From assembly GCF_046119375.1 (NCBI RefSeq), contig NW_027362761.1, forward strand, positions 1,154,688,001-1,154,752,000: DNA of 64,000 nt, read 5' to 3'. The notes under the pieces were generated by a model. It searched no databases and had not been told where the DNA came from. It saw only the letters and a program-made list of their open reading frames with translations. Below, one piece after another: positions 4,395-62,526 of this stretch (its first letter is position 1; every line of letters starts with the position of its first letter). The translations under genes were made by a program, and so were the position numbers. This DNA comes from Phyllobates terribilis. Taxonomy: Eukaryota.

Positions 4395-6823
4395 ATGAAG
4401 AAGGCAGGGAGTAAGGCATGTGGGCGTGGGCGTGGGCATGGAGTTTCTGCAGGGAGAGGACGTGAGGATTCTGTGCCTGCAGGGAGAGGACGTGGGGATT
4501 CTGTGCCTGCTGCGGGCACCAGTGACTCAGCATCCCCCAGTTTTACCAGGGAACAGTCCTTTATGCGCAGCTTTGTAGGAGCTAGCCGTACCCCACTGCT
4601 GCGGGAGGACCAAATTGAAGCCGTTGTCGGATGGATGGCAGCTAACGCATCGACTTCAATTAGTTCCAGATCCTCTCAGGTCCTGAGCACTGAAGAGCAC
4701 CCATCTGTCTCTTCACCACCTGCCAAATTGTCCAGGCAGTCAGAGAGCCCTGGACAGGAGCCATCTCTACTTCTGTTCTCTGAATCTCTTGGCTTGGAAA
4801 GAGGGGGCCAGCCAAGCAGAATTCGAGAATTTGAAGAAGAGGTAGTATGCAGTGATGCGCAACCGTTATGTCTCTCTGAATCTGAAGAGGCGGGTGGGCC
4901 AGTGCCTATGGTCAGCAGCACACCTCAGTACGCATCTGATGATGAGACTCAGGTGCCACTTTCTGGTGCGTACTGTGCTGTCGAGACTACCCAGGAGAAG
5001 CAGTTGTTTGAAGAGGGTGGTGTAGATGATGAGGTCCTTGACCCATCATGGCGTGAGGGACAGGAAGGTGGTGGGAGCAGCTCTGAGGAAGAGATTCCCC
5101 GAACTGCCCAAAAAGGAGGGAGAGGGAGGGGGCAGACTTGGTTGCCTGTAGCCTCCACTTCGGCACCCATTAGGAGCATGGCTCTTCCAAAATCCAAAGC
5201 GGGCGCTCCCAAGACTTGCAGTGCCTGGTCCTTTTTTGACACAGTTGCAGATGACATTTGCGTTGTCAAATGCAAGCTGTGTAATCAGAAGGTGAAAAGA
5301 GGGAAAAATGTCAGCAACCTCAATACCACAAATATGTGGAAACATGTGCGGACCAAGCACGTGGTGGAGTTACAAAAACACACTGAAGACCTAGGCCAAC
5401 CTACAGCGCCACCTACCACCTCTTCAGCTCGTGTTGTAGCCTCTTCCTCCAGCTCACACACAGCTGGTTCGGCTTCCTCACAGGATCGCCATGGAAGAAT
5501 CTCTGGCACTGTTGTACAGAAACACAGTGTAATTCCACCCACAGCACCACTTTCCCAGTCATCCTCACACTCCCAGGCCAGTCTACAGCCATCGTTAGCA
5601 CAGGCATGAGAGAAAAAGGCACCCATACTCGGCAAACCACCCCCGAGCACAGGCTCTGAATGCTGGCATTGCTAAACTACTGGCCCTTGAAATGCTATCA
5701 TTCAGGCTGGTGGAGACTGACACATTCCGTAACTTTATGGCATTGGCAGTCCCACAATACAACGTGCCCAGCCAATTTTATTTCAGCAGGCAAGCCGTCC
5801 CTGCCCTGCAACATCATGTGGAGGGAAAAATTAAACATGCGCTACAAAACGCCGTCAGTAGCAAGGTCCACCTGACCACCGGTGGACCAGTAAGCATGGA
5901 CAGGGACGATACCTTTCCCTCACTGCCCATTGGGTAAATGTTGTGGAGCCGGGTACAGATCTTGAGAGTGGCGCTGTACGTGTTCTGCCAACTCCAAGGA
6001 TTGCAGGAATCCAGTCTGTACACATTGACTCCTCCTCATACTCCAGTTCCTCTGAATCAGCGCTGCAGGAGCCGTCACGGTCTACCTCCACATCGATCCG
6101 TGAACGGTTACCTGTTATGGTGACCAATATGAGCACAGCCGTGGCCAAACGTCAACAGGCCGTATTAAAATTAATTTCTTTGGGGAATCGAAGCCACACA
6201 GCGCAGGAGCTCTGGAATGCCATCAAGCAGCAGAGCGACGTGTGGTTTGTGCCAGCGAATCTCCAGCCAGGCATGGTAGTGTGTGACAATGGCCGAAATC
6301 TGGTGGCAGCTCTGGGCCTAGGCAACCTCACTCACATCCCATGTCTGGCACATGTGCTCAACTTGGTCATGCAGAGTATTTTGAGGGACTATCCGGATCT
6401 TGATGCACTGCTTCACAAAGTCCGCATAGAGTGCGCTCACTTGCGGCGTTCCAGCAATGCAAGATCACGCATTGCAGCTCTGCAGCGCCGATTACGTCTT
6501 CCGGAACATCGCATCATATGTGACCTACCCACCAGGTGGAATTCAACGTTACATATGTTGGAGAGGTTGTGTGAGCAGCAGGCAGCAGTAATGGAGTACC
6601 AGCTGCAGCAGGCGCAAACAAGTCGCAGTGCGCGCCGTTCACACTTCACCACCACTGAGTGGGCCTCTATGAAGGACATTTGCCACGTTTTGCGTGCCTT
6701 CGATTATTCCACGCGGATGGCGAGTGCAGATGATGCACTAGTCAGCATGACTATCCCCCTTATCTGCCTGCTTGAAAAAACACTGCGAGCACTAAGGGGC
6801 GAGGTTTTGGAAGAGGTGGAGGA
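4395..6823 (+). pseudogene. hAT-A transposase, N-terminal and central part (BED zinc finger, catalytic core), disrupted
   Basis: BED finger AWSFF...CKLC...MWKHVRTKH, plus VVCDNGRN, HIPCLAHVLNL and CDLPTRWNST motifs. Lesions: TGA at 5607-5609 with an adjacent frameshift, a small deletion at ~5880 removing the Asp of the TTDTWT motif, and the hAT-B1 insertion at 6824. Confidence 0.9.
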
Positions 6824-7326
6824 TAGTGTTGAGCCACCCCCGTAGTGTTCGAGTTCGGTTCGGTTCGTCGAACACCCGTGTGTTCGCCGAACTGTTCGTC
6901 GAACTGTTCGTCGAACACCTTCGAACACCATTAAAACCAATGGCAGGCAAACAAAAACACATAGAAACACATAGAAAACACCTTCAAAGGTGTCCAAAAG
7001 CTGACAAACTGCTCAGAAGACACAACTAACACATGGAAAAGTGACAAGTACATATAGTCATGTGAAAAGAAAAGAGGTGGAGGAGTAAAAGGAGGGGGAG
7101 ACACAGATATAGGCATGTCATGCCCTTCTAAAATCCAAAAAGTGAGAAGCCGACACGTTCAGTCCGCTCCTGCCCGTGCCACCTCCGTGTCGCCGGGTTT
7201 GTGCCAGAGCCGCGGTGATCCCTGACGGCCAGCCCCCCTCTCCCAATACTGGTGCCTGTCCGCTGGTGGGTCGAGCGAGCCCCCCTGTGGTGGAAGCAGC
7301 TCTAAGCTTTTTAATTTAAATTGTCT

Positions 7327-7593
7327 CTCTAATTTGAATAAATACACTTTAAATCCATTTACAAGGATCTATTGGAGGGCAAGTCTCATGCCAGCAGCCA
7401 CGTAATTCCAGCTCCAGTAGCGTCCACTAAAGCTGCTGCAGTTAAAAAGCTTTTATAAGGATCGAGCTCGGCTGTCCACCGCAAGGCATCCTACTGCCAG
7501 TCCGAGCCCCTATGCCTTGGGGTGCCTCCTGATGCTCTTCACTGAGTATCCCGTGGTCCCGAAGCATTTCCTTTGAAAAAATGAAGTGTCCAA
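7327..7593 (+). rRNA. 18S rRNA (fragment): Degenerate, non-functional 18S rRNA fragment carried inside hAT-B1
   Basis: tacactttaaatcc...ggatctattggagggcaagtctcatgccagcagcc...taattccagctcca...gctgcagttaaaaagc...gatgctctt...gaagcattt.ctttgaaaaaat matches the conserved vertebrate 18S segment around the GTGCCAGCAGCCGCGGTAATTCCAGCTCC motif and the following variable region. Confidence 0.9.
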
Positions 7594-7754
7594 ACTACAG
7601 GTGGTGTAGCTTGCTTAACAGCCGGGATAATCCGCTGACTAGCAGACCCTGCTACTAGGCACAAAGTATTTCCTGGGCTAGATGCAGTTAAAAATTTGTA
7701 ATTAGATACTCTCGTTGGATGCTGAGAAAGTCTCCTGGCACGCCATATATGATT

Positions 7755-9500
7755 CTCTTAAAAAGCTTGGGGTAGGGGTCTAGGGGACCCTTTTATAGCC
7801 AAAATCACGGCCCTGTATCGCAATACGTCACCTAGGCTGAAGATAAATGGAACTGTAGCACCCTGAGGGCTCGGTTGCTACAGAGGTATTGCACCTCACC
7901 CAGAGGTGTGATATCTCACTCTCAGATAAGGATGTAGTGTGGATCAGGACCCGACACCTGCATGCATTACACCACATTGCCGTGGGGCAGGGCGACCAAT
8001 ATGCCCCTGAGATGGGCACGACAGTCCCTGTCCCTGGCTGGAGTGGGGGGAGGGAACACTGAGGAAGAGGAACCCTGTAGTGCAGGAGCAGGGAGGAAGC
8101 AGTTCCTGGGTGCATTGAGAAGGGAGTATAAAAGGTGGGCACCATCTTAGTTCAGTGCAGAGAAGTCTGAGCAGAAGTGGCAGGGAGCAGGGGATCTGCT
8201 CCGGAGGCGGGCCTAGTAACAGAGGCCCAGGCCTGGAAGAGGGAGAAGGAAGGAAGAGGAGCGGAGAAGGCTCCAGGAACGAGGAACGAAGGGATCTCAG
8301 GGGTGCGGACGGGCGATTCGCCACCGCACGCCCGAATCCACCTGCGTGGAGGGGTCAGGCCAAAGGGGGAGACCGGTCCCCGAAACTAGTGGAGGCAGGA
8401 AACGACCCTCAGTTGAAACAGGAGGCTGTGACATTTTATGTGGCGCAGCCACTCGCTACACCAGCTAGGAAGGCACCACATAGGGTCAGGGAAACTGGCG
8501 CCAAGTTTACCAAGAGGAGGCCCGAGGCAGCCGGACAGAAGGGTTGGTAAGAAAGGCCAGACAAAGGACACACAAAGGGGGTCCTGCGAAGCACTCCAAA
8601 GTTATCTGGGAGTTGTCTGAGCCCCGCACCTGGTGAGCACAGTACGACGTGGGCAGCCGTTACATGCAGACGTGGTCTGGATAATAAGAACTGTGAGTAA
8701 AGGCCCTGGACTGCATCACTGACTCCGTGTCATTACTGCTGCTGCCCTGCACCATCACCCCATCCTCCGCATACACTGCCCTGAGGCTATACTCCTCCCG
8801 TGGGGAGTTATGCTACGCTCTGCTGCACCCACAACACCAGCCTCAGCGGTCTGCCCTGGAGCGGCGGTTCACTCTGACCGCAATCCACGGGTGGCGTAGT
8901 TGGACATTTAAACATCAAAACCAAATAAATAGTTCCGCCACTGGTTTGACCGCCCTGAGCCACGGAACCGGGTCGCCGCCACGGAGACTACAACCACCAG
9001 CATCCACCAAAAAGGGTCCGGCTCCGGGTGTCCCAAGGCCCAGGGGGCGCGTCAGAACATTTTCATCACCTTTCACAATCACCAATGGGACAAGGCAGGG
9101 ATGTTCTCTGTCCCCTCTCTTATACATCCTAGTGACGGAGCACCTGCTCTCATCAATTCGCCATAACCCCAATATTAGGTGGATTGAGGTGGGAGGCACC
9201 GAGTACAAGTGCTCTCTATTTGCTGATGATGTCCTAGTATATATCACTCAATCACATATATCCATCCATGCTGTTATGGCTGAAATAGATCACTTTGTTA
9301 CATGGTCAAATTTTAAAATCAATGCAGCGAAGTCTGAGGCCCTCGATGTCTCCCTCCCCAAATCCATATAGGATTCCATCCAGTCCAACTTTCCCTTTGC
9401 CTGGCCCTCACAGGGTATCAAATACTTAGGAATTCCTATTCATAGAGACCTCTCCCATCTATGTTATCTTAATTTTGGGCCCTTTATTGAACAACTCCAT
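7755..9500 (+). pseudogene. L1-clade reverse transcriptase fragment (cargo of hAT-B), split by a solo LTR
   Basis: 7755-7853 joined to 9055-9500 encodes [30 protein letters not shown]...SLFADDVLVY...FKINAAKSE (QGCxLSP and FADD motifs). An uninterrupted copy lies at 62190-62526. Confidence 0.85.
7854..9054. mobile_element. Solo LTR (1201 bp, Gypsy-like)
   Basis: TG...CA ends and a 4-bp TSD GAAC (7850-7853, 9055-9058). The empty site ...ataaatggaacattttcatc... is present in hAT-B2 at ~62280. Confidence 0.85.
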
Positions 9501-9576
9501 ACAGACCACGGTTGGCAAGTTAGAACTGTAAGATTCACTACGTGAACCACTGGTGTTTTGTGGAAAAGCACATGTA

Positions 9577-10936
9577 CACTGTGTTCCAAATTATTATGCA
9601 AAAAGTGTTTAGGAGTGATAAGGGAAGAATTTGTTTGTTTGTCAGTTAAACTCATTGATGGTGATGTGTGTCAGGGCTCTTTATATCACTGTAAGCAATT
9701 GCAGATACCTGTGCTAATTAGTTTGGCAGGTGTGTCCAATGAAAGGCAAGACTACTTAAGAAGGCTGTCTCACATTATTAAGCAGCCTACATTTTCTGCC
9801 AAAATGGGAAAGAAAAAGAATGTGTCGGCTGCTGAGAAGCAACAAATTGTGGAGTGTTTAGGTCAAGGCATGACTACAATCAACATTGTGCGATGATCAG
9901 GATGAAGTGTCTTGGCAATCAAGAAGTATGTAGCTGATTCACAGTACACACGTGTGCGTGCTGATAAGGGCAAATTGAGGACTCTTTCCTACAGGCAATT
10001 ACGTCAGGTTGAAAGAGCAGCGGCAAAAAAGCCTTGTCATAGCAGCAGACAAGTTTTTGAAGCTGCTTGTGCCTCCAACGTCCCCCGAACAACAAGATGC
10101 AGGGTCCTTCAGAGGTTTGCAGCTGTGCATACACCATCCTGTCGACCTCCTCTATCCACTTCACACAAGCAGAAACGGCTCCAGTGGGCCAAACATTACA
10201 TGAAGACTGATTTCAAAACTGTTTTGTTCACGGATGAGTGCCGTGCAGCGCTCGATGGTCCAGATGGATGGAGTGGAGAATGGCTGGTTGATGGACACCC
10301 CACGCAAACACGGCTACAGCGCCAACAAGGAGGAGGTGGAGTAATGTTTTGGGCTGGAATCATGGGGAGAGAGATTGTCGGCCCCTTTAGGATCCCTGAA
10401 GGCGCTAAAGATGAACTCCATAATGTATGTGGATTTTCTCAAACAGCACTTCCTGCCATGGTTCAAGAAGAAGAACCGTGTATTTCACAGCAAGATCATT
10501 TTTCTGCATGATAATGCACCATCTCATGCTGCACATAAAACATCTGCATCTCTGGCTGATATGGGCATAAAAGGGGACAAACTTATGGTGTGACCCCCAT
10601 GCTCCCCTGACCTCTACCCCATTCAGAACCTTTGGAGCATCATTAAAAGGAGTGTCTATGATGGCGGGAGGCAGTTCACATCTAAGCAACAGCTCTGGGA
10701 GGGTATTCTGTCCTCATGCAAAACAATTGAAGCAGAAACCATCCAAAACCTGACAAATTCAATGAACGAGAGAGTTCAGAAGCTCCTTTCGAACAAGGGG
10801 TCCTATGTGAAAATGTAACATCACCTAGAATAAAGTTTTGAGTTGAAAACTGTTTGATTTCAGTTTCTAACAACCTGCTAATGCTTATAATTTCAAAAAT
10901 GACCATTTTTTTGGTCTTTATTAAAATGAAAAGGTT
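9577..10936 (+). mobile_element. Tc1-superfamily transposon with DD37E spacing (TRT-like), pseudogenised, right end lost
   Basis: TA followed by left TIR CACTGTGTTCCAAATTATTATGCA. Transposase remnants MGKKKNV..., VLFTDEC..., VMFWAG, FLHDNAPSH...*PPCSPDLYPIQNLW with stops and frameshifts. Confidence 0.88.
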
Positions 10937-11059
10937 GATCGAAAAGTTTGGGGGATCTAAGAGTGTGGCAACCCAGTAGTCATGATTACTTCGAATTCTG
11001 ACAATATGAGGGTCATGCTGCAGGTAGTGCAGCAAGAAGGCACTTATGTGTCTTGCGCA

Positions 11060-11340
11060 TCTCGGAGCCCCAAAATTATTTTCCGGGCTAGATGCAGCTA
11101 AAAATTATTTTTAATTTTAAATCTGGTGAAGCTTTAGTATAGATGGCCTAATAGGATCAGTGCTGCACACTGCTACAAAGCCCAAATTATTTTCCAGTCA
11201 AGATACAGATAAACTTGATTAGTAATTTTAAATCTGGTGGAGCTTATTATAGATGGCCTAATAGAATCAGTGCTGCACACTGCTACAAAGCCCAAATTAT
11301 TTTCCAGCCAAGATACAGATAAACATGATTAGTAATTTGA
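11060..11340. repeat. 110-bp tandem repeat (~2.5 copies) just 3' of the hAT-B transposase
   Basis: tgctgcacactgctacaaagcccaaattattttcc occurs at 11161 and 11271. It is homologous to the 108-bp array at 15205-16565. Confidence 0.8.
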
Positions 11341-11386
11341 AAGCTTAAAACGGTTGGTAGGGTGATTTTAACCAATCATCAAGCTT

Positions 11387-14300
11387 TTACTCTCCCCAGG
11401 ATGACACAGGGGTAGAAAAGTCGTTTCGGATCCATGATTTGTTCATCTTTATGAACGTGAGTCTGTCTACATTATCAGTGGAGAGCCGCGTGCGCTTATC
11501 TGTCAGCACACCACCAGCAGCGCTGAACACACGTTCAGACAGAACGCTGGCTGCGGGGCATGACAAGGTCTCCAAGGCGTAAGTGGCTAGCTCCGGCAAT
11601 TTATTCAGATTGGAAGCCCAAAAAGAGCAAGGGTCCAGTGACACAGTCATGGCTTCAATGTTTACTTGGAGATACTCCTGTACCATCGTCTCTAGGCGTT
11701 GACTATGTGTCAGACTTCTTGTCTCCTGTGGCCTTGCAAAGGATGGGCTAAGAAAGTGGTGAAATGATTCCGCAAAATTGATGTTACCAGCAGATACTGT
11801 GGTTCTGTTACGGTTTGAGTGCTGAACACTTGACGGTCCCACGGTTGGCAAGTTGGAACTGTGAGATTCACTACGTGCACCACTGGTATTTTGTGGAAAA
11901 GCACATGTAAGATTCTGCAACAGTCTCTGCTGATACTCCTGCATGCGTGCATCCCTTTCTATGGCAGGAATAATTTCTGCAAATTTACTTTTGTACCGGG
12001 GATCTAACAGTGTGGCAACCCAGTAGTCAGGATTATTTCTAATTCTCACAATTCGAGGGTCATGTTGCAGGTAGTGCAGCAGGAAGGCACTCATGTGTGT
12101 TGCGCATCCAGGAGCACCAAGTCCCTGTTGTGTTGGTGGCGAGGTAACAATCATGCTTCCTTCCTCTGTCCTCTCCCCCCAACCTCGCACAACAGAAATG
12201 TGATCAAGGTCTCCCTCATCTGATGAGTCTTCCATCAGTTCGTCCTCCACTTCTTCCTGGGCTCCTGCACCTTCCTCACTAGTTTGGCTGCTACCATGCG
12301 CCCTGGTAAAACCATCTCCCCCACCCTCACATGCCTGCCGCCTTGGTGCTGCCGACCGTCTGGACCTTGCAGATGTTAGCCCTTCCGCATACAACTCCTC
12401 CTCCTCTACTTCCTCCACCTCCTCTTGTGCCACCACCTGACTCCGAATTCTGTTTAACATGTGCTCCAGCATGTAAATCACCGGAATAGTCATGCTGATA
12501 ATGGCATCGTCAGCACTAAACATCTTCGTCGCCATTTCAAAACTGTGCAGAAGGGTGCATAGGTCCCTGATCTGAGACCACTCCTCCAGCGTGATTTGCC
12601 CCACCTCTGGATCTCGTTGGCCCAGGCTATACGTCAGAACGTATTGCACCAGGGCTTGTCGGTGCTGCCACAGTCGCTGCAACATGTGCAGAGTTGAATT
12701 CCACCGGGTAGGTACATCGCATTTTAGCCGGTGAAGTGGCAGGCCCAACGACTTCTGTAGAGATGTAAGTCGCTGAGCTGCGGTATGCGAACGGCGAAAG
12801 TGAGCACACAGCGACCGTGCCCTCTGCAGAAGGCCATCTAGTCTGGGATAGTGGGCTAAAAATTGCTGGACAACCAGGTTCAACACGTGAGCCATACAAG
12901 GCACGTGTGTGACATTGCCCCGGCGAAGGGCCGCACCCAGGTTTGCAGCATTGTCGCACACGGCCTTCCCTGGTTTCAGGTCCAGTGGAGACAACCATTC
13001 ATGAAATTGGTTCTCCAGAGCTGACCACAACTCCTCAGCTGTGTGACTCACATTTCCCAGACATTTCAATGTAAAAACCGCCTGATGACGTTGAGCCCTA
13101 CTGCCAGCATAGTAAGGAGGTGTGCAGGATCACTTCTGCGCAGTTAGAAAGCTTGTGGCATGACCAGACAGGCTTTCGGTGCAGGTGGAAGACCGAGAGG
13201 AGGTTGAGGAGGCAGAAGCAGTGGAGGAACTTTGACATAAAGAGGATTGACGCACAACTCGTGGGGACGGCAAGACTTGGACAGCAGCCCCTTGTCCTGC
13301 TGTCACCATAGTTACCCAGTGCCCAGTCAGCGACATGTAACGCCCCTGTCCATGCCTACTCGTCCAAGTGTCTGTGGTGAAATGCACCCTGTCACACACA
13401 GAGTTTCTCAAAGAAGCGGTGATGTTGTGTGCGACATGCTGGTGGAGCGCAGGCACACCTTTCTTTGAGAAGTAGTGCCGACTGGGCATCTGGTACTGGG
13501 GCACTGCGACGGACATAAGGTCTCGAAAATCCTCTGTGTCCACCAGGCGGAAAGGCAGCATTTCTGTAGCCAAGAGCTTGCAGATGGTGAAATTCAACCT
13601 CTTAGCTTTCTCATGGCTAGGAGGAAATGGTCTTTTACTTGTCCACATCTGAGGGACCGAGGGCTGGCTATTGTGCTTAGACGGGGTTGATAAGGGTGTC
13701 CCCGGCAAACTGCCGGTCTGTAAGGAAGATGCAGGCGGACATGTTAGGTTGCCTTGATCCAAAGGTGGTGCTATCGATGTCGGACAGCGCTCAACACCAG
13801 CTGGTGTTACCACCTCCAAAGAAAATGATGACCTGCCAATCACGCTGGCTGTTGCGGGTAAAGAGGTGGCAGGTCTGCGCCCCAAAACAGGTGTCAATGC
13901 TGTCCCCCCAGTCACAGAGGATGAAGAGGCCGCGGATGCACAAGATATGGCAGACGGTGGTTGGCCCGGCCGGCTAGGCCGCATTGTAGCACACTGAGCT
14001 TCCCACTGCAACTTATGCTTCATGTCCATGTGCCGGTTCATGCATGAAGTACTCAAACTATGTATTTTTTGGCCTCTACTTAGCTTTTGCTGACAAATGT
14101 TACAGATAACACGAGTTGGGTCATCTTTATCGATCTGAAAAAATGCCCAGGCTATGCAAGGCTTAGCACCCATGCGACCTGAAGAGCCACCACGACTTGT
14201 GGTGAGAGGCAGAGTTGTGTTTGAAGATGCAGTTGATGACGTGCTTCCAGTACTACGTCTCTGTCCAGGAAGGCGCAAATTGACCTCGTCGTCACTAGCA

Positions 14301-15088
14301 TCTTCCTCCACCTCCTCTGCTGACCTCATCTCTTGGCTGACTGTGGGTTGACAGTAAGTGGGATCTCCAACCTCATCATCATCACCCTGTGCGTTATCAC
14401 ACCCGTCGTCCTCAGAGCCAACCTGTTCCTGCCCTGACAAAAAACTAAAGTTGTCGCTCCAATCAGGTATTTGAGTCTTATCATCGTCTTCCTCATTGTC
14501 TCCACCAACAGGAGTTACAGTTTGGGAATGAGGGTCTACATTATGGTCAGAACCTTCTGCGTCTGGTCCTGGATCCGACTCATAAAGATTCTGGGCATCA
14601 GTGCAGATCATTTCCTCGCCTGGATTCACAGAAGCGCTGGAGTCGACCTCTGATTCCCAGGCTATAGTATGAGTAAACAGCTCTGCAGACTCAACCATCT
14701 GTTCTGCCTCATACTCAGACGGGCAGCTGGAGATTTGGGAGCTGTGAGGAAGCAAGTGCGATTGGGGTGACACCTTTGAGGACTGGAGTATTTGTGATGT
14801 TGAAGTTGATGTGGAGGAGAGCCCACTTAAAGGAGCACTTGATATCCGTTGAAGCACCTGCTGTTTTTGTGCCTCATCTGGAATTTGTAGCGATTGGCGT
14901 GGCCGTAAGAAAGGGATCTTATCACATTGTCCGCTAAAAGAAGTAGACATTTTAGTTTGGCTGGAAGATGGTCTTTCTTCTGCAGATGTTACTGTTGCTT
15001 TAACACCTACCCCACGGACACAACCTTTTTTCCCCTTCCCAACACGCCTATTCCCCTTTCCACCAGCAGCAGGCCTTTTTCCACTCAT
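11387..15088 (-). pseudogene. hAT-B transposase, 1233 codons with one in-frame TGA (13130-13132)
   Basis: ORFs 13130-15088 and 11387-13069 share a frame, and reading through the TGA gives K*SCTPPYYAGSRAQRHQAVFTLKCLG. Motifs are intact: BED finger (AWAFF..CNIC..MNRHMDMKH), TTDTWT, VCDNAAN, CMAH, PTRWNST, CPAASVLSERVFS and the C-terminal dimerisation domain. Confidence 0.93.
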
Positions 15089-15204
15089 TTTGGTGGTTAA
15101 CTAATTAACAACTCTGGAGTTGTTTGCACCAAAAAACAATGGATGGGAACCGAGCAGAGCTGAGTGGCCAAACTGTGGTATTAGGCCAAAACTATTGGCT
15201 GGGT

Positions 15205-16565
15205 TAGATGCAGAAAAAAATTATATTCAATTTGCAACCTGATGGAGGTCAGTATAGATGGACTAATAGAGAAAGTCCCACACACTGCTAGAAGGCCAAA
15301 TATTTTTTCAGAGCTAGATGCAGAAAAAAATATATTCAGTTTGCAACCTGATGGAGGTCTGTATAGATGGATTAATAGAACAAGTCCCACACACAGCTAG
15401 AAGCCCAATATTTTTTCAGAGGTAGATGCAGAAAAAAATATATTCAGCTTGCAACCTGATGGAGGTCAGTATAGATGGACTAATACAACAAGTCCCACAC
15501 ACAGCTAGAAGCCCAATATTTTTTCAGAGGTAGATGCAGAAAAAAATATATTCAGTTTGCAACCTGATGGAGGTCTGTATAGATGGATTAATAGAACAAG
15601 TCCCACACACAGCTAGAAGCCCAATATTTTTTCAGAGGTAGATGCAGAAAAAAATATATTCAGTTTGCAACCTGATGGAGGTCAGTATAGATGGACTAAT
15701 ACAACAAGTCCCACACACAGCTAGAAGCCCAATATTTTTTCAGAGGTAGATGCAGAAAAAAATATATTCAGTTTGCAACCTGATGGAGGTCTGTATAGAT
15801 GGATTAATAGAACAAGTCCCACACACAGCTAGAAGCCCAATATTTTTTCAGAGGTAGATGCAGAAAAAAATATATTCAGTTTGCAACCTGATGGAGGTCA
15901 GTATAGATGGACTAATACAACAAGTCCCACACACAGCTAGAAGCCCAATATTTTTTCAGAGGTAGATGCAGAAAAAAATATATTCAGTTTGCAACCTGAT
16001 GGAGGTCTGTATAGATGGATTAATAGAACAAGTCCCACACACAGCTAGAAGCCCAATATTTTTTCAGAGGTAGATGCAGAAAAAAATATATTCAGTTTGC
16101 AACCTGATGGAGGTCTGTATAGATGGATTAATAGAACAAGTCCCACACACAGCTAGAAGCCCAATATTTTTTCAGAGGTAGATGCAGAAAAAAATATATT
16201 CAGTTTGCAACCTGATGGAGGTCTGTATAGATGGATTAATAGAACAAGTCCCACACACAGCTAGAAGCCCAATATTTTTTCAGAGGTAGATGCAGAAAAA
16301 AATATATTCAGTTTGCAACCTGATGGAGGTCTGTATAGATGGATTAATAGAACAAGTCCCACACACAGCTAGAAGCCCAATATTTTTTCAGAGGTAGATG
16401 AAGAAAAAAATATATGCAGTTTGCAACCTGATGGAGGTCAGTATAGATGGACTAATACAACAAGTCCCACACACAGCTAGAAGCCCAATATTTTTTCAGA
16501 GCTAGATGCAGAAAAAAATTATATTCAATTTGCAACCTGATGGAGGTCAGTATAGATGGACTAAT
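15205..16565. repeat. 108-bp satellite array, ~13 units, upstream of the hAT-B transposase
   Basis: caagtcccac recurs at 15381, 15489, etc. (108-bp period). Two sequence variants are visible. Confidence 0.93.
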
Positions 16566-17493
16566 AGAATGATGCTATGCCCAAAAGATTTTACTTCACT
16601 AGGTGCAGTAAAAAAATTGGTATTCTATACACAGGTGGTATATCTTGCAACACAGATAGGCTACTCCACTGACTAACACACTCTGCAATAGGCCAAAAAG
16701 GATTAGCTTTGCTAGATTCAGCCAAATGCTGTGAAAAAAACTTGCACAGCACTGGCACAGACCTGCCTGGCAAAAACTGATAGGAACTGATGTAACCTAG
16801 TCCTGAAAAGTACTCCAATTACAATTAGTCTTTACTCCCACAATCTATCTATTTAAGAGCACAGACCTGCCTGATAAAAGTCGTAGGAAATGCTGTAACC
16901 TAGTCCTTAAAAGGACTGCAATCACAACTATTCCCTACTCCCAAGCTATCTGTAGATTTGTGCGAAAATTGGCTTGAAATTACCAAGGTATAGCGCACAC
17001 AGCAACAGCGGTGGCGTCTAACACGCAGCTGCAGCAGTGAGAAAATGGTGGCGACGGGGAAAATGGCTTGGTCTTATAGGGCAAGGACATGTGACATACA
17101 CTGCCAATGACACATGCCCTTGCTTGTGTGAAAAAAAGCACTTCGCTCCGTGTGTGCGCTGCTGATAGGCTGACAGATTGCACCTCCCCACTGTAAATGC
17201 GGGAAAGAGGAAAAAAAATGGAGATCTTCATTGTTCCTGCAGAGATCCATCCCCTGCCCCTCCCCCCACCCCGCTGTACACTCAAACTGCGTATTAACAT
17301 TAATTTTCATCATTACTGAGAAAAAATCCAGTTATGATTTTGGTGCACGAACAGTTATCGAACATAACCTCGAACAGCCGAATTTTTCTCAAATTGTTCG
17401 TGTTCGCCGAACGGCTCGAACACCGCCCAAAACAGCTCGAATTTGAGATTGGCGAACAGTTCGAGTAGAACAACGCTCTTCTCTAGTGGAGGA

Positions 17494-22724: not shown

Positions 22725-23144
22725 TGTTAGAACCTTGCTCTTAGGTTTTTTCCTTTGCTGGTCACATGACCTTGTTGGCCTATTTAATCCTGCTCCGCCC
22801 TTCTGGCTTTGCTGGACTTCATTGTATAACTACTTTCTAGCTAGCCTGTGCTCTGTATCTAACTCTGTTAGTTTGCTTGGTCTACGGACCTCAGTGTTCT
22901 ATATATTTTGTTTGTTTGTCTGTCTGCTACTATTTCTGTTAGGAGGTGTCCCATTTTCCTCCCAGTCCTTAGTACTTGTAGGGATTCCTTCCCCACATCT
23001 ATAGGTCTCCGTACAGACTAGCTTAGGACTTTAGCAGGTCTGATCGCAGGATCAGGTCCCCTGTTACATCGTAGGGATAAAGCGGAGTTCTATCGTAGGG
23101 ACAAATCTCCTCTCTTTCCTTAGCTCTGGTAGCAGAACATAACA
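22725..23144 (+). repeat. 5' LTR
   Basis: Direct repeat of 27273-27692 with about 5 substitutions seen by eye. TATTTAA at 22781. Confidence 0.95.
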
Positions 23145-23177: not shown

Positions 23178-23192
23178 TTTTTCTGTTCCATC

Positions 23193-27260: not shown

Positions 27261-27272
27261 AAGGGGGGGTAC
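27258..27272 (+). promoter_or_regulatory. Polypurine tract
   Basis: AGAAGGGGGGG-TAC immediately 5' of the 3' LTR. Confidence 0.85.
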
Positions 27273-56693: not shown

Positions 56694-57197
56694 TAGAGTT
56701 GAGCCACCCCCGTAGTGTTCGAGTTCGGTTCGGTTCGTCGAACACCCGTATGTCCACCGAACTGTTCGTCTAACTGTTCGTCGAACACCGTTGAACACCG
56801 TTACAACCAATGGCAGGCAAACAAAAACACATAGAAACACATAGAAAACACCTTCAAAGGTGTCCAAAACCTGACAAACTGCTCAGAAGACACAACTAAC
56901 ACATGGAAAAGTGACAAGTACATATAGTCATGAGAAAAGATAAGAGGTGGAGGAGTAAAAGGAGGGGGAGACACAGATATAGGCATGTCATGCCCTTCTA
57001 AAACAAAAAACGTGCGAAGCTGACACGGCCAGTCCGTTCCTGCCCGTGCGACCTCCGTGTCGCCGGGTTTGTGCCAGAGCTGCGGTGGACCCTCACGGCC
57101 AGCCCCCCTCTCCCAATACTGGTGCCTGTCCGCTGGTGGGTCGAGCGAGCCCCCCCTACGGTGGAGGCAGGTCTAAGCTTTTTAATTTAAATTGTCT

Positions 57198-57467
57198 CTG
57201 TAATTTGAATGAGTACACTTTAAATCCTTTTACAAGGATCTATTGGAGGGCAAGTCTGATGCCAGCAGCCGCGGGAATTCCAGCTCCAGTAGCGTCCACT
57301 AAAGCTGCTGCAGTTAAAAAGCTTTTATAAGGATCGAGCTTAGCGGTCCACCGCAAGGCGTCCTACTGCCAGTCCCAGCCCCTGTGCCTTGGGGTGCCTC
57401 CCCGATGCTCTTCACTGAGTGTCCCGGGGGCCCGAAGCATTTCCTTTGAAAAAATTAAGTGTCCAAA
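57198..57467 (+). rRNA. 18S rRNA (fragment): Degenerate, non-functional 18S rRNA fragment carried inside hAT-B2
   Basis: ctgtaatttgaatgagtacactttaaatcc...attggagggcaagtctgatgccagcagccgcgggaattccagctcca...gcagttaaaaagc...gatgctcttcactgagtgtcccgggggcccgaagcattt.ctttgaaaaaatt. Confidence 0.92.
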
Positions 57468-58049
57468 CTACAGGTGGTGTAGTTTGCTTAACAGGTGGGA
57501 TAATCCGCTGACTAGCAGACACTGCTACTAGGTCCAAAGTATTTCCTGGGCTAGATGCAGTTAAAAATTTGTAATTAGATCTACAGGCGGTGGCTACTCC
57601 GCTGACTAGCAGACAGCAGAGTGCATTGAGGTGAAGGGTACATTGCTGGAAAAAAAAAAAAAAAAAACTCTTTAAATCTCTTAGTTTGCGAGTGTGAACG
57701 AGCTGCAAGTGTCCGGAGCGTAAGTGCGAACGAAAGTAAGTGTGTGACTTGTTTTTCAGTGACTTTGGATTCAGGGAGTTTGGAAGGGAGGACTTAGGAC
57801 TGAATTGCTGACTGTATTTCATCTTTCTTTACTTTACTTTTTACTTAATTAATCCACCTGACCTACTTATCTGATTCCCCCGTCCATACTTGATACTTAA
57901 TTGATCCCCCGTCCATACTTTACTGATCCCCCGCCGATATCTAATTGATACACTTGCACATCCCTAATTAATCCCCGTCCATACACCTATATATAAATAA
58001 TTGTGTTTTGTACTTGTATATATATACTGACTGTATCCCCATATTTAGA

Positions 58050-58975
58050 ATGACGTCCATTTTGGCCGGAGCCGTGCAGTGTACATCTTGCGCAATGTAT
58101 GCATTCCGTGAGCAACCGCTCGAGGATCCATACTGCTGCGAGAGATGTGAGCATATCGTGCACTTGGAAGCCCAAATTCTGGATCTAAGTGCTCAGATAG
58201 CGGTACTGAGGAGCATCGACAACATGGAATGGAGTTTGCTGCTCACCGAGCAGACACTCAATGGGTCAATACTGGGGTGGAGCATAGAAGGGAAGTGCAG
58301 GCTGAACAGGCAGGGAGCTGGATAACAGTTAGGAGGGATAGAGGGAAGAAGTATAGGAAGGCTGGTTCAGAACCGGCATTATTGGAGCACGACAGATCCT
58401 CTGACCGCCGGGGGAGTGTATGCTCCAGTAATGAGGGGGAGGGGGGAAGTGTAGGGCAGGCAAGACAGGTTCTGGTAGTGGGTGACTCTATTATTAGGGG
58501 GACAGACAGGGCAATCTGTCACAAAGACCGGGATCGCCGAACGGTGTGCTGCCTCCCTGGCGCTCGAGTCCGGCACATCGCGGATCGGGTTGACAGGTTA
58601 CTGGGTGGGGCTGGCGAAGACCCAGCGGTCATGGTCCACATCGGCACCAATGACAAAGTGAGTGGTAGATGGAGGGTCCTTAAAAATGATTTCAGGGACC
58701 TAGGTAGGAAGCTTAGGGCAAGGACCTCCAAGGTAGTTTTCTCAGAAATACTACCAATCCCGCGAGCCACACAGGAGCGCCAATGGGAAGTTAGGGAGGT
58801 GAATAAGTGGCTAAAGAGTTGGTGCAAGGCAGAAGGATTTGGGTTCATGGAGAACTGGGCCGACTTCGCGGTCGGCTACAGGCTCTACCGTAGGGACGGG
58901 CTGCACCTCAATGGGGAGGGTGCAGCGGTGCTGGGGAAGAAGATGGCTAATAGGTTGGAGGAGTTTTTAAACTAG
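58050..58975 (+). pseudogene. CR1 ORF1 (CxxC-CxxC zinc finger, coiled coil, SGNH esterase) with one frameshift at ~58263
   Basis: MTSILAGAVQCTSC...YCCERC..., then a frame change in a G run, then VVGDSIIRG...HIGTND...DGLHLN. Confidence 0.85.
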
Positions 58976-59103
58976 AGACGGGGGGGGGAAACCAAGGAAA
59001 TAGGTGGGATGTGAGGCAAGCAAGGGGGAAGGGGAGAAGTGAATATAATGAGGGTGGAGAGGGGGGTGGGGATAGTACAGTTAGATCGTTAGAGAAGAAT
59101 AGG

Positions 59104-61911
59104 ATGCTAAATAACCCCAAAGTTTTATCTTGCATGCTGACCAACGCAAGAAGCCTGACCAATAAGGCGGATGAGCTGCAGGCGCTTATATCGGAGGAGA
59201 GGTATGACATCGTAGGTATAACAGAGACTTGGCTAGACGATAGCTACGACTGGGCGGTAAATTTATTAGATTATAGTTTATTTAGAAGGGACCGGAAACA
59301 GGGGAAAGGCGGAGGAGTCTGCTTATATGTAAAGTCATGTCTAAAACCCAGACTAAGGGAAGATATAGGAGAGGGAGAAGAGGGGGTCGAGTCCATGTGG
59401 GTAGAGATAGAGGGAACTAAAAATAATAATAAAATATTACTGGGGGTCTGCTATAAGCCACCCAATATAACAGAGGAGAATGAGAATCTGCTATTAGGAC
59501 AAATAGACAAAGTAGCAAAACATAATGAAGTGATTGTAATGGGGGATTTCAACTACCCGGATATTGACTGGGAAACAGAAACCTATAGATCTCAGAAAGG
59601 AAAAAGTTTCTTGACAAATATTAAGGATAATTATCTCTCCCAACTAGTGCAGGAACCAACGAGAGGGAAGGCCGTGTTGGACTTAATATTGACTAATAGG
59701 CCTGATAGAATAACTGAGGTACAGATAGGGGGGCACCTAGGTAATAGCGACCATAATATTATCGACTTCAAAATGCCCTTCAGTAGGGTTATCAATAAGG
59801 GAACAACAAAAACATTAAACTTTAGGAGGGCGAAGTTTGATCAGCTGAAAGAAAACCTTCAACTTATTGACTGGGACAAAGTTCTTAATCAAAGGAATAC
59901 GAATAGTAAATGGGAAACCTTCAAAAGAATTCTGAATACTCAGTGCGAGAGATATATACCGTATGGGAATAAAAGGGCCAGAAATAAGAGGAAGCCAATA
60001 TGGTTGAACAAGAACGTAAAAGGGGCGTTAAATAGCAAAAAAGAGGCATTCAAGAGATTAAAACAGGAAAACAGTAAGGAGGCACTAATGTGTTACAAGG
60101 AAAAAACGAGAACCTGTAAAAAACAAATAAAAATAGCGAAGGAGGAAACAGAGAGACGTATTGCTAGGGAAAGTAGATCAAATCCCAAACTGTTCTTTAC
60201 GTATATAAATAGTAAAAGGATTAAATCGGATAATATTGGACCGATAAAAAGTGAGGAAGGCAAAATCATAGAGAAAGATGAGGATAAAGCTAATCTATTA
60301 AATAATTTTTTTTCGACAACTTTCACAAAGGAAATAGAACTAACAGGAGAAATGAGAAGTGACAAACTTAATCCTCCACTAAGTATGACAAATCTAACCC
60401 AAGCTGGGGTACAGAAACGCCTCAGTAACATTAAAATAAACAAATCACCAGGACCTGATGGCATACACCCACGGGTACTAAGGGAACTAAGTAATGTGAT
60501 AGACAGACCGTTATATCTTATATTTAAGGACTCTGTTGAGACTGGGTCTGTGCCACTTGATTGGCGACAGGCGAATGTAGTGCCAATATTCAAAAAGGGA
60601 GCGAAAAGTGACGCCGGAAACTATCGGCCGGTGAGTCTGACGTCCGTTGTGGGCAAAATTTTTGAAAGCTTCATTAAAGAGGCAATTACGGAGCATCTTG
60701 ATGCTAATAATCTTTTAATCCCGAACCAACATGGATTCATGAGGAATCGCTCCTGCCAAACAAACCTGATTGACTTCTATGAGGAGGTTAGCTCTCGAGT
60801 AGATCAGGGGGAACCAGTGGATGTTGTGTATCTCGACTTCTCAAAAGCGTTCGATAGCGTGCCACATAATAGGTTGGTATACAAAATGAGAATGATGGGG
60901 CTGGGGGAAAATGTCTGCAAGTGGGTAGCTAACTGGCTAAAGGATAGAAGGCAGAGGGTGGTTATAAATGGAATATTCTCAGATTGGGTAAGCGTCACTA
61001 GTGGGGTACCACAGGGATCTGTACTAGGCCCAATGTTATTTAATATCTTTATTAACGACATAGTCAAAGGGATAAATAGTAAAATATCAATATTTGCAGA
61101 TGACACAAAGTTATGTAAAACAATTAATACAAAAGAGGACAGTGCAGACCTACAGAGGGATTTGGATAAGCTGGGTAGGTGGAGCATTAAATGGCAAATG
61201 AGGTTTAACGAGGAGAAATGTAAGGTCATACATATGGGAAGGAAAAATGGAAGTCACCAGTACTCACTGAATGGGAAATCATTGGGGAATTCAGAAATGG
61301 AGAAGGACTTGGGCATCTTCATTGATAGCAAACTAAATTGGAGTGCCCAAAGTCAGGCCGCTGCTGTAAGGGCAAACAGGGTAATGGGATGTATCAGAAG
61401 AGGTATAGCTGCAAAGGATGAGAACATTGTTCTTCCACTGTACAAAGCACTGGTCAGACCACACTTGGAATACTGTGCTCAGTTATGGGCCCCAATATAT
61501 AGAAAGGATATAAATGAGCTTGAAAAGGTACAAAGGAGGGCAACAAAATTAATAAAGGGAATGGAGGGACTGCAATACCTAGAGAGGTTGGCAAAACTAG
61601 GACTATTCAGCCTGGAAAAGAGAAGGTTGAGGGGGGACATAATAAATGTGTACAAATATGTTAGGGGACAGTATAGAGATCTAGCCCGGGATTTGTTCAA
61701 AAGGAGGGATATTACGGTAACAAGAGGGCATTCACTAAGACTGGAAGAGAAAAGGTTTCAGCACCAGCATAGGAAGGGGTTCTTTACGGTAAGAGCAGTG
61801 AGAATATGGAATTCACTGAGTGAGGAGACGGTAATGTCGGATTCACTACACCAGTTCAAGCGGGGACTGGATGCATTTCTAGATACCAGGCAGATTTCAG
61901 CATATACTTAA
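59104..61911 (+). CDS. CR1 ORF2: APE endonuclease plus reverse transcriptase, uninterrupted (first ATG 59104; frame open from 59011)
   Basis: TNARSL, GITETWL, MGDFN, LDLILTN, SDH, KSPGPDGIHPRVL, NYRPVSLTS, DFSKAFD, GVPQGSVLGP, FADD, EKDLG, RPHLEY. Confidence 0.96.
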   Translation: MLNNPKVLSCMLTNARSLTNKADELQALISEERYDIVGITETWLDDSYDWAVNLLDYSLFRRDRKQGKGGGVCLYVKSCLKPRLREDIGEGEEGVESMWVEIEGTKNNNKILLGVCYKPPNITEENENLLLGQIDKVAKHNEVIVMGDFNYPDIDWETETYRSQKGKSFLTNIKDNYLSQLVQEPTRGKAVLDLILTNRPDRITEVQIGGHLGNSDHNIIDFKMPFSRVINKGTTKTLNFRRAKFDQLKENLQLIDWDKVLNQRNTNSKWETFKRILNTQCERYIPYGNKRARNKRKPIWLNKNVKGALNSKKEAFKRLKQENSKEALMCYKEKTRTCKKQIKIAKEETERRIARESRSNPKLFFTYINSKRIKSDNIGPIKSEEGKIIEKDEDKANLLNNFFSTTFTKEIELTGEMRSDKLNPPLSMTNLTQAGVQKRLSNIKINKSPGPDGIHPRVLRELSNVIDRPLYLIFKDSVETGSVPLDWRQANVVPIFKKGAKSDAGNYRPVSLTSVVGKIFESFIKEAITEHLDANNLLIPNQHGFMRNRSCQTNLIDFYEEVSSRVDQGEPVDVVYLDFSKAFDSVPHNRLVYKMRMMGLGENVCKWVANWLKDRRQRVVINGIFSDWVSVTSGVPQGSVLGPMLFNIFINDIVKGINSKISIFADDTKLCKTINTKEDSADLQRDLDKLGRWSIKWQMRFNEEKCKVIHMGRKNGSHQYSLNGKSLGNSEMEKDLGIFIDSKLNWSAQSQAAAVRANRVMGCIRRGIAAKDENIVLPLYKALVRPHLEYCAQLWAPIYRKDINELEKVQRRATKLIKGMEGLQYLERLAKLGLFSLEKRRLRGDIINVYKYVRGQYRDLARDLFKRRDITVTRGHSLRLEEKRFQHQHRKGFFTVRAVRIWNSLSEETVMSDSLHQFKRGLDAFLDTRQISAYT

Positions 61912-62189
61912 AAATAAAATAAAATAGTAGGTTGATACAGGGATTTATTCTGACTGCTGGTTTCAGAGTCGGGAGGGAATTTTTCCTCAGGAGAAGATTG
62001 GCCAAATCATTTGGGGTTTTTGCCCTCCTCTGGATCAACTTTAGCAATTACAGAACTAACAGGTCGAACTTGTTGGACGCAAGTCTTTATTCGGCTTTAC
62101 AAACTATGTTACTATGTTACTATGTTACTGCTACTTGGCCCAAAGCATTGCCTGGGCTAGATGCAGTTAAAAATTTGTAATTAGATACT

Positions 62190-62526
62190 CTCTTAAAAAG
62201 CTTGGGGTTGTGGTCTAGGGGATCCTTTTATAGCCAAAATCATGGCCCTGTATCGCAATCTGTCAGCTAGGCTGAAGATAAATGGAACATTTTCATCACC
62301 TTTCATAATCACCAATGGGACAAGGCAGGGCTGTCTTCTGTCCCCTCTCTTATACATCCTAGTGATGGAGCACCTGCTCTCATCAATTCGCGATAACCCC
62401 AATATTTGGTGGATTGAGGTGGGAGGCATCGAGTACAAGTGCTCTGCATTTGGTGCTGATGTCCTAGTATATATCACTCAATCACATATATCCACCCCTG
62501 CTGTTATGGCTGAAATAGATCACTTT
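62190..62526 (+). pseudogene. L1-clade RT fragment (hAT-B cargo, copy 2)
   Basis: LKINGTFSSPFIITNGTRQGCLLSPLLYIL..., near-identical to 7755-7853 + 9055-9295. Confidence 0.85.

What the first reader, a model, noticed from the sequence alone, without database searches (positions are those of the whole stretch)
6824..9500. hAT-B family carries a captured 18S rRNA fragment and an L1 RT fragment as fixed cargo
Seen: both copies (from 6824 and from 56694) have the same order: terminus, GC-rich block, ~270-bp 18S fragment spanning the universal GCCAGCAGCCGCGGTAA motif, ~100-bp repeat, L1 RT fragment. Both share the same short deletion after AAAAAGC relative to vertebrate 18S as I recall it, so capture preceded amplification. 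Established: Pack-type DNA transposons capture gene fragments, and rRNA-derived SINEs (5S, 28S) exist. I am not aware of an 18S-carrying, transposase-encoding vertebrate hAT, but cannot search for one. Inference: this is a Pack-hAT family dispersing rDNA pieces. Consequences could include rRNA-like small RNAs, interplay with rDNA silencing, and false signals in 18S PCR, FISH or rRNA-depletion work.
Basis: partly seen in the sequence, partly recalled or inferred. Interest (0 to 1): 0.78.

Follow-up and report, generated by a model that had tools for sequence, protein, structure and literature searches.

The report
Frog hAT transposon carrying 18S scrap
A 10.7-kb cut-and-paste (hAT) transposon of a poison-frog genome carries a decayed ~290-base piece of the 18S ribosomal RNA gene and a fragment of an L1 retrotransposon as passive baggage; this cargo is unusual and I found no published description, but the kind of event is known and nothing shows a working RNA.

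Summary
Two stretches (6824-7707 and 56694-57580, 93.6% identical) have the same order: hAT terminus, GC-rich block, 18S-like piece, 110-bp unit, L1 reverse-transcriptase fragment. The 18S pieces match Rfam SSU_rRNA_eukarya at E 9e-12 and 1e-19.

Copy 1 is a complete hAT, 6824-17485. It has an 8-bp target duplication (GTGGAGGA), imperfect TAG... ends, and a 1,233-codon BED/hAT-dimerisation transposase with one premature stop. Copy 1 interrupts the transposase gene of another hAT. Copy 2 interrupts the transposase gene of a third hAT, and a paralogous uninterrupted site lies at 37440-37480. The two are therefore independent insertions, not a segmental duplication.

Shared changes at conserved 18S positions show a single acquisition before the two copies split.

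The Pack-type label does not fit, because the element encodes its own transposase. The 18S piece covers about 16% of the gene, is mutated at conserved positions and lies antisense to the transposase, so it is most likely passive filler. A 2024 review of rDNA-derived transposon modules lists no 18S or hAT case.

This scan has noted the same element in many other windows of this genome.

The parts
6816..6823 (.). Left target-site duplication GTGGAGGA of hAT-B copy 1
   Evidence: Identical 8-mer at 17486-17493. The interrupted hAT-A transposase reading frame resumes after the right copy.
6824..6935 (+). hAT-B copy 1: 3' terminal inverted repeat (TAGTGTTGAGCC...) and subterminal GTTCG/CGAAC repeats
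   Evidence: The first 11 nt are identical to the terminal repeat of hAT-A, which has TSD-bounded ends at 2859 and 30224. A 12-bp TGTTCGTCGAAC unit occurs 3 times. The reverse complement of the right end, TAGAGAAGAGCG, matches 8 of the first 11 nt.
6936..7303 (+). AT-rich spacer (6936-7135) and GC-rich block of unknown origin (7136-7303)
   Evidence: GC 0.41 and 0.66. The block gives no rRNA match in Rfam even at E<=10 (run on copy 2). Identity to copy 2 is 97.5% and 91.6%.
7304..7597 (+). Decayed internal 18S rRNA gene piece (helix 18 motif through V4), copy 1; antisense to the transposase
   Evidence: Rfam RF01960 54 bits, E 9e-12. It is 93.3% identical to copy 2, whose match runs to about model position 785. 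Universally conserved positions are mutated.
7598..7707 (+). One 110-bp unit of the element's own tandem-repeat family
   Evidence: The copy 2 unit resembles 16611-16726 and 11100-11340 at 65-70%; aligned; arrays.
7708..9515 (+). L1-clade ORF2 reverse-transcriptase fragment, lacking both ends of ORF2; split by a 1.2-kb insert at 7854-9054
   Evidence: Pfam RVT_1. Human L1 ORF2p residues 651-741 match at E 1e-16. Translation reads SLDAEK...[10 protein letters not shown]...FADD. Copy 2 has the same 5' junction at 62189.
7854..9054 (.). Solo-LTR-like insert private to copy 1 (TG...CA, 4-bp duplication GAAC at 7850-7853 and 9055-9058)
   Evidence: Absent from copy 2, where the two L1 parts abut and share a single GAAC. 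No protein family match.
9576..10940 (+). Nested Tc1/mariner-like element with a broken transposase
   Evidence: Pfam HTH_Tnp_Tc3_2 at E 1.7e-4, below Pfam's own cut-off. 10582-10938 is 96.6% identical to 43031-43387. Sequence read.
10951..11073 (-). 123-bp duplicate of the element's own transposase coding sequence (11998-12120), lying in the 3' non-coding region
   Evidence: 88.6% by BLAST; aligned.
11073..11342 (.). 110-bp tandem array, 2.4 units, just downstream of the transposase stop codon
   Evidence: Tandem Repeats Finder.
11387..15088 (-). hAT-B transposase gene: 1,233 codons with one in-frame stop at codon 653 (13130-13132)
   Evidence: Pfam zf-BED E 2.6e-10 and Dimer_Tnp_hAT E 9.7e-15. 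Frame check. Relatives in dendrobatoid frogs are annotated as ZBED4-like.
15205..16569 (.). 108-bp tandem array, 12.6 units, upstream of the transposase gene
   Evidence: Tandem Repeats Finder, 96% matches; self-BLAST.
17330..17485 (-). hAT-B copy 1: 5' subterminal GTTCG/CGAAC repeats and the terminal repeat ending ...CTCTTCTCTA
   Evidence: Sequence read; followed by the right target duplication at 17486-17493.
56694..57174 (+). hAT-B copy 2: terminus (TAGAGTTGAGCC...), subterminal repeats, spacer and GC-rich block; predicted target duplication AACATAAA at 56686-56693
   Evidence: The left flank is the transposase gene of a third hAT. An uninterrupted paralogue reads ...gtaacataaa|ctctggcac at 37455-37480.
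57175..57470 (+). Decayed 18S rRNA gene piece, copy 2
   Evidence: Rfam RF01960 80 bits, E 1e-19; extension to about model position 785.
57471..57614 (+). 110-bp unit, then the start of a second unit that is cut by a LINE; the second unit resumes at 62128-62188
   Evidence: Alignment.
57615..62127 (+). CR1-like LINE private to copy 2: esterase ORF1, endonuclease/RT ORF2 of 966 aa, (TATGTTAC)n tail
   Evidence: Pfam Lipase_GDSL_2, Exo_endo_phos and RVT_1; junctions read.
62189..62526 (+). L1 RT fragment of copy 2, with the same 5' junction as copy 1. It lacks 46 bp present in copy 1 and is cut at 62527 by a second LINE that runs off the window.
   Evidence: Pfam RVT_1.

Best explanation
hAT-B is a hAT-superfamily cut-and-paste DNA transposon of autonomous type, with a BED-finger, ZBED4-like transposase. 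The non-coding stretch between its stop codon and its 3' end has filled up with foreign and duplicated DNA. That filler comprises a GC-rich piece of unknown origin, a ~290-bp internal piece of the 18S rRNA gene, an internal fragment of an L1 ORF2, and a 123-bp duplicate of its own coding sequence. Individual lineages have added later insertions (solo LTR and Tc1 in copy 1; two LINEs in copy 2). The 18S piece and the L1 piece each entered once, in an ancestor of both copies, and have since been moved passively whenever the whole element was excised and reinserted. Shown: the hAT anatomy, the rRNA origin of the piece, its single origin, two independent insertions, and decay at conserved rRNA positions. 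Inferred: that the piece was taken up as DNA during sloppy double-strand-break or gap repair of the element (template switching or filler DNA, as described for Ac/Ds and Pack-type elements), and that it has no function.
For: hAT identity. Copy 1 has an 8-bp duplication GTGGAGGA on both sides, and the hAT-A transposase frame resumes after it. The terminal repeat shares its first 11 nt with hAT-A, whose ends are TSD-bounded. Pfam finds zf-BED and Dimer_Tnp_hAT in one 1,233-codon frame with a single stop.

rRNA origin. Rfam E 1e-19 and 9e-12, extending through V4.

Single origin before the split. Both copies share changes at positions the Rfam model holds conserved (GAG>AAG, GGUG>GAUG/CAUG, CGUAG>UUUAU). 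Identity between the copies is about the same in the 18S piece (93.3%) as in the hAT parts around it (89-97%).

Independent insertions. The flanks differ. Copy 1 sits in the hAT-A transposase gene and copy 2 in that of a third hAT, at a different position and in the other relative orientation. A paralogous empty site lies at 37455-37480. Each copy has private nested insertions.

Patchwork or repair origin. The pieces are internal fragments with no poly-A tail or flanking duplication, and they lie next to a duplicate of the element's own coding sequence.

No function. The piece covers only about 16% of the gene, the helix 18 motif is broken in both copies, and it is antisense to the transposase.
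Against: Only two copies could be examined, and the right end of copy 2 lies beyond the window. How the piece was acquired is not shown. No host 18S or rDNA unit was available, so a host origin rests on my recollection that the V4 part looks amphibian-like. No sister element lacking the cargo could be aligned: hAT-A is too divergent outside the terminal repeat. Lack of function is inferred from decay, not tested; expression and small RNAs could not be examined.
Confidence: 0.8

Rival explanations
1. RNA-level origin. A fragment of 18S rRNA was reverse-transcribed by LINE machinery (template switching, as in U6-L1 or 5S-L1 chimeric retrocopies) and inserted into the hAT together with the L1 piece.
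For: The 18S piece and the L1 RT piece lie in the same orientation, with 18S on the 5' side of a 5'-truncated L1. That is the order expected from template switching.
Against: A 110-bp unit of the hAT's own repeat family (two units in copy 2) separates them, so there is no direct junction. In copy 1 the L1 piece stops inside the RT region, without a 3' end or poly-A. No duplication flanks the 18S piece (read).
Confidence: 0.12
2. The 18S piece is a working module: a landing pad for an 18S-specific Tx1-type LINE (as earlier notes of this scan suggest for other copies), a source of rRNA-like small RNAs, or a shield against silencing.
For: The piece is kept in both copies at the same place. Earlier scan notes (s1-230036, s1-245111; not checked here) report a Tx1-clade LINE sitting exactly at the conserved motif in other copies.
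Against: In this window neither copy has anything inserted at the motif, and the motif is mutated in both. The piece is no better conserved than its neighbours. The two LINEs in copy 2 lie elsewhere.
Confidence: 0.07
3. The two copies are one segmental duplication or an assembly artefact rather than transposition.
For: Both copies lie in one 64-kb window in the same orientation. The right end of copy 2 is not seen.
Against: Homology starts exactly at the terminal repeat in both. Copy 1 has a perfect 8-bp duplication and splits a reading frame that continues on the other side. The flank of copy 2 is a different hAT gene, with a paralogous empty site. The copies differ by 6% and by private nested insertions.
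Confidence: 0.01

Closest known systems
Pack-type transduplicating DNA transposons (Pack-MULE, Pack-CACTA, Pack-TYPE; PMC8903248)
   Same: A terminal-repeat-bounded DNA transposon carries a fragment of a host gene and spreads it to new sites.
   Different: Pack-type elements are non-autonomous and carry protein-coding exons, mostly in plants. This element encodes its own near-intact transposase, is vertebrate, and the fragment comes from an rRNA gene.
Pokey (piggyBac) of Daphnia, with rDNA IGS-derived repeats (review PMC10946416, Table 2)
   Same: An autonomous DNA transposon with an rDNA-derived internal module and internal tandem repeats near the transposase gene.
   Different: Pokey's module comes from the intergenic spacer, and Pokey targets 28S rDNA. 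Here the module is an internal 18S coding piece in a hAT, and neither copy sits in rDNA.
rRNA-derived SINEs and TRIMs (SINE3 and other 5S SINEs, SINE28, Cassandra; PMC10946416)
   Same: Mobile elements that contain rRNA gene sequence and scatter rRNA-like copies across the genome.
   Different: Those are retroelements, and the 5S ones use the rRNA promoter. Here the piece is an internal passenger of a DNA transposon, with no promoter role shown. The review's table lists no 18S-derived module.
Filler DNA and internal rearrangements in Ac/Ds and other hAT derivatives (my own knowledge, not checked here)
   Same: hAT interiors become patchworks through error-prone repair after excision, including duplicated pieces of the element itself.
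   Different: Such filler usually marks defective, deleted derivatives. Here the patchwork rides on an element that keeps a full-length transposase gene.
Tx1L LINE inside the Tx1D DNA transposon of Xenopus (my own knowledge; cited by earlier scan notes)
   Same: A frog DNA transposon hosting L1/Tx1-type LINE sequence as a composite.
   Different: Tx1L is full length and site-specific for Tx1D. Here the L1 piece is a short internal RT fragment at a single shared junction, not at the 18S motif.

Membership tests
hAT superfamily DNA transposon | 8-bp target-site duplication | tested here: met
   GTGGAGGA at 6816-6823 and 17486-17493. Copy 2 shows the left side only, AACATAAA, predicted from a paralogous empty site.
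hAT superfamily DNA transposon | Short, imperfect terminal inverted repeats beginning (T/C)AG | tested here: met
   Left TAGTGTTGAGCC; reverse complement of the right end TAGAGAAGAGCG, 8 of 11. The same 11-mer ends hAT-A, which has an 8-bp duplication GTCGCGAC.
hAT superfamily DNA transposon | Transposase with BED zinc finger and hAT C-terminal dimerisation domain | tested here: met
   Pfam PF02892 E 2.6e-10 and PF05699 E 9.7e-15, in one frame.
hAT superfamily DNA transposon | RNase-H-like DDE catalytic core | not tested
   The Pfam copy used reported no core-domain family. Relatives carry precomputed PF27039, whose meaning I did not check.
Pack-type (transduplicating, non-autonomous) DNA transposon | Carries host gene fragment(s) between its terminal repeats | tested here: met
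   An 18S rRNA gene piece lies about 480 bp inside the 3' end.
Pack-type (transduplicating, non-autonomous) DNA transposon | Non-autonomous: no transposase gene of its own | tested here: not met
   A 1,233-codon transposase frame with a single stop.
Pack-type (transduplicating, non-autonomous) DNA transposon | The same cargo in copies at different loci | tested here: met
   Two copies in different hAT genes. Only two could be examined.
rRNA-derived SINE (5S SINE, SINE28 type) | rRNA-derived part at the head of a short retroposon with a LINE-type or A-rich tail and its own target duplication | tested here: not met
   The piece is internal to a 10.7-kb DNA transposon and bounded by hAT sequence on both sides, with no tail.
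L1 template-switch chimeric retrocopy | Direct junction of the RNA piece to an L1 3' part with poly-A and flanking duplication | tested here: not met
   One or two 110-bp hAT units lie between the pieces. The L1 piece lacks its 3' end in copy 1.
Functional 18S rRNA gene or rDNA unit | Full-length SSU with conserved core positions intact | tested here: not met
   Only model positions ~476-785 of 1831 are present. The helix 18 motif and other conserved positions are mutated in both copies.

The most novel reading that the evidence does not exclude
The 18S piece is not neutral baggage. By imitating the most conserved stretch of the small-subunit rRNA gene, it gives an 18S-specific Tx1-type LINE thousands of harmless landing sites, or it feeds rRNA-like small RNAs into silencing pathways. 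On that reading, a DNA transposon, a site-specific LINE and the rDNA are linked in a three-way relationship.
Probability: 0.08. Interest if true: 0.65.

Novelty: new member of a known kind. Interest (0 to 1): 0.36.

Why it matters
Transposons that carry rDNA-derived modules are known, but the 2024 review's catalogue (PMC10946416, Table 2) holds only 5S, 28S and spacer cases and a single DNA transposon. An 18S coding piece riding on an autonomous vertebrate hAT adds a new instance. If the family is as abundant as other notes of this scan suggest, 18S-like copies would be scattered through a very large frog genome. That is relevant to repeat annotation (they would be labelled 'rRNA'), to rDNA copy-number estimates from read depth, and to rRNA-depletion probes or FISH. 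The piece ends near 18S position 790. From memory, not tested, it therefore lacks the reverse site of the usual V4 primer pairs, so V4 PCR artefacts seem unlikely. The element also illustrates how much debris a hAT can carry (10.7 kb) and still be moved.

Tried and rejected
I did not resend it in any form and did not use read laying, so copy number, fixation in the family and expression are untested. After that I sent no 18S letters to any pattern, genome or findings search.

The genomic context of the transposase relatives in Anomaloglossus and Ranitomeya could not be fetched, so other frogs could not be checked for the cargo.

3. The 24-nt hAT-B terminus was absent from metagenome contigs and viral contigs.

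4. A findings search by sequence gave nothing.

5. Is the GC-rich block a further, more decayed part of 18S or of other rDNA? No Rfam rRNA match at E<=10. From memory it faintly resembles the V2 region, but that is not a test.

6. I tried hAT-A as a cargo-free comparison to fix the cargo boundaries. The ends are too divergent beyond the 11-nt terminal repeat.

7. A search for an inverted copy of the full left terminus failed. The right end was found instead from the target duplication and the resumed hAT-A frame.

8. Segmental duplication, an rRNA-derived SINE and an L1 template-switch chimera were considered and rejected (see rivals and membership tests).
Full report
What is there. Self-comparison of the window shows two stretches that run in parallel. 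6824-7707 matches 56694-57580 (887 bp, 93.6%), 7754-7853 matches 62189-62288 (93%), and 9055-9296 matches 62285-62526 (94.2%). Rfam's eukaryotic small-subunit rRNA model passes its gathering score at 7304-7423 (54 bits, E 9e-12) and 57175-57295 (80 bits, E 1e-19). The alignment covers the helix 18 region around GCCAGCAGCCGCGGTAA. A separate scan of 57270-57500 carries the match through the variable V4 region to about model position 785, ending in ...UUUGAAAAAAUUA-AGUGUCCAAA. At E<=0.05 the whole window has no other SSU-like place. The block upstream is GC-rich (0.66-0.68 against 0.46 for the window) but gave no rRNA match.

The element. The left boundary is a true hAT end. Copy 1 runs from 6824 to 17485 (10,662 bp) and is flanked by the 8-mer GTGGAGGA on both sides (6816-6823 and 17486-17493). 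It splits the transposase gene of another hAT, here called hAT-A. The hAT-A frame ends at the insertion and resumes directly after it, with a hAT dimerisation domain (17486-18448). hAT-A itself spans 2859-30224, has TAGTGTTGAGC ends and an 8-bp duplication GTCGCGAC, and sits in a satellite. hAT-B begins with the same 11 nucleotides, and the reverse complement of its right end matches 8 of those 11. Both ends carry GTTCG/CGAAC subterminal repeats.

On the minus strand hAT-B has one 1,233-codon frame (15088 to 11387) with a BED finger and a hAT dimerisation domain, interrupted by a single stop at codon 653. Tandem arrays of 108-110 bp lie on both sides of the gene (15205-16569 and 11073-11342). 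The closest transposases in public data come from dendrobatoid frogs: 71% identity in Anomaloglossus, 88-89% over short stretches in Ranitomeya imitator gene models, and 42-45% for ZBED4-like proteins. hAT-A and hAT-B are 43% identical in the C-terminal part.

The 3' non-coding region is a patchwork. Read in the direction of the transposase, the order after the stop codon is as follows:
- the 110-bp array;
- a 123-bp duplicate of the element's own coding sequence (10951-11073, copied from 11998-12120);
- a broken Tc1-like element (about 9576-10940);
- the L1 fragment (9515 back to 7708);
- one 110-bp unit;
- the 18S piece, antisense to the transposase;
- the GC-rich block, an AT-rich spacer and the 3' end.

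The RT fragment belongs to the L1 clade: it matches human L1 ORF2p residues 651-741 at E 1e-16, against 0.02 for R2. It reads SLDAEK...[10 protein letters not shown]...FADD. It lacks both the 5' and, in copy 1, the 3' part of ORF2. In copy 1 it is split by a 1,201-bp TG...CA insert with a 4-bp duplication GAAC (7854-9054). Copy 2 lacks this insert, and there the two halves abut.

Copy 2 in turn has two 110-bp units instead of one. It carries a 4.5-kb CR1-like LINE inside the second unit (57615-62127; esterase ORF1, endonuclease/RT ORF2, (TATGTTAC)n tail). It also has a 46-bp deletion at the start of the L1 piece, and a second LINE cuts the L1 piece at 62527 and runs off the window. The unit-to-L1 junction is the same in both copies.

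One origin, two insertions. Identity between the copies is much the same in every segment: 92.0% in the end, 97.5% in the spacer, 91.6% in the GC block, 93.3% in the 18S piece and 89.3% in the unit. The rRNA piece is thus as old as the sequence around it. Both copies share changes at positions that the Rfam model treats as conserved (GAG to AAG, GGUG to GAUG or CAUG, CGUAG to UUUAU, and a 1-base loss in AAAUUAGAGUG). Each copy also has private damage to the helix 18 motif. So the piece was acquired once and had already decayed before the two lineages split.

The insertions are independent. Homology starts exactly at the terminal repeat in both copies. Copy 1 lies in the hAT-A transposase gene on the plus strand. 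The left flank of copy 2 is the transposase gene of a third hAT on the minus strand (Dimer_Tnp_hAT in 56119-56418). An uninterrupted paralogue of that gene reads ...gcagcgtaacataaa|ctctggcac at 37440-37480, where copy 2 reads ...gcagtgtaacataaa|TAGAGTTGAGCC. This predicts the duplication AACATAAA. The right end of copy 2 is beyond the window.

How it most likely works. The element is an ordinary hAT that moves by excision and reinsertion, and everything between its ends moves with it. The 18S piece is an internal 16% of the gene, mutated at universally conserved positions, antisense to the transposase and no better conserved than its neighbours. I read it as passive filler. How it got in is not shown. 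Two features fit DNA-level uptake during error-prone repair of the element (template switching or filler DNA): the cargo consists of internal fragments without poly-A tails or flanking duplications, and it lies beside a duplicate of the element's own coding sequence.

The main rival is LINE-mediated template switching onto rRNA. In its favour, 18S lies 5' of a 5'-truncated L1 piece in the same orientation. Against it, one or two hAT repeat units separate the two pieces. The L1 piece itself may simply be a 5'-truncated nested insertion that was later cut down.

Known or new. The term 'Pack-type' is reserved for non-autonomous elements, so that label fails on a defining feature. The element behaves like a transduplicating transposon but is an autonomous-type hAT with baggage. 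A 2024 review of rDNA and transposons lists as rDNA-derived modules only 5S-promoter SINEs and TRIMs, SINE28 (28S) and the spacer repeats of Pokey. It lists no 18S and no hAT case (PMC10946416). The genome papers for Dendrobates tinctorius and Oophaga pumilio do not mention 18S in hAT elements, and full-text searches found no such report. Repbase and Dfam could not be searched. I class it as a new member of a known kind.

Earlier notes of this scan. Many other windows of this same genome carry first-reader or follow-up notes on the same hAT with an 18S piece. Some describe the same L1, solo-LTR and Tc1 debris at other sites, and some describe a Tx1-clade LINE at the conserved motif. These are unchecked AI notes. 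They agree with what I found, and they suggest that the family is abundant and that the copy 1 type composite has moved as a whole, but I could not verify that here.

As a result, copy number, fixation across the family, presence in other frogs, comparison with the host's real 18S, and expression all remain untested.

Noticed in passing
window 2859-30224: hAT-A is a 27.4-kb composite hAT with TAGTGTTGAGC ends and a palindromic 8-bp duplication GTCGCGAC, inserted in a ~170-bp satellite (1200-2819, which continues at 30233 onward). It hosts hAT-B copy 1, long internal tandem arrays (18512-20785 and others) and a Ty3/gypsy element.
   Followed up: partly
window 6823/6824 and 56693/56694: Both hAT-B copies interrupt the transposase genes of other hAT families (hAT-A on the plus strand; a third hAT on the minus strand at 55995-56693, with a paralogue at 36716-39431). 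They do so at different positions and in different relative orientation. hATs make up about 4% of a related frog genome (PMC11152451), so two out of two is striking. It may reflect a target preference or simply a hAT-rich neighbourhood.
   Followed up: partly
window 22725-27692: A young Ty3/gypsy element. Its 420-bp LTRs are 98.8% identical (22725-23144 and 27273-27692), and it has an uninterrupted 1,355-aa gag-protease-RT-RNase H-integrase-chromodomain ORF (23193-27260). It is inserted in a tandem array of hAT-A.
   Followed up: partly
window 57615-62127: An apparently full-length CR1-like LINE with open ORF1 (248 aa, GDSL esterase) and ORF2 (966 aa, endonuclease plus RT), an internal A18 run near its 5' end, and a (TATGTTAC)n tail. 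A second partial copy at 49893-51126 is 82-84% identical.
   Followed up: partly
window 10951-11073: A 123-bp direct duplicate (about 89%) of hAT-B's own transposase coding sequence (11998-12120) lies in its 3' non-coding region. This is a hint of repair-associated template switching within the element.
   Followed up: yes
window 62527-64000: A further LINE (endonuclease N-terminus reading ...YDVIGITETWW...) begins abruptly inside the L1 fragment of hAT-B copy 2 and runs off the window. It was not classified.
   Followed up: no
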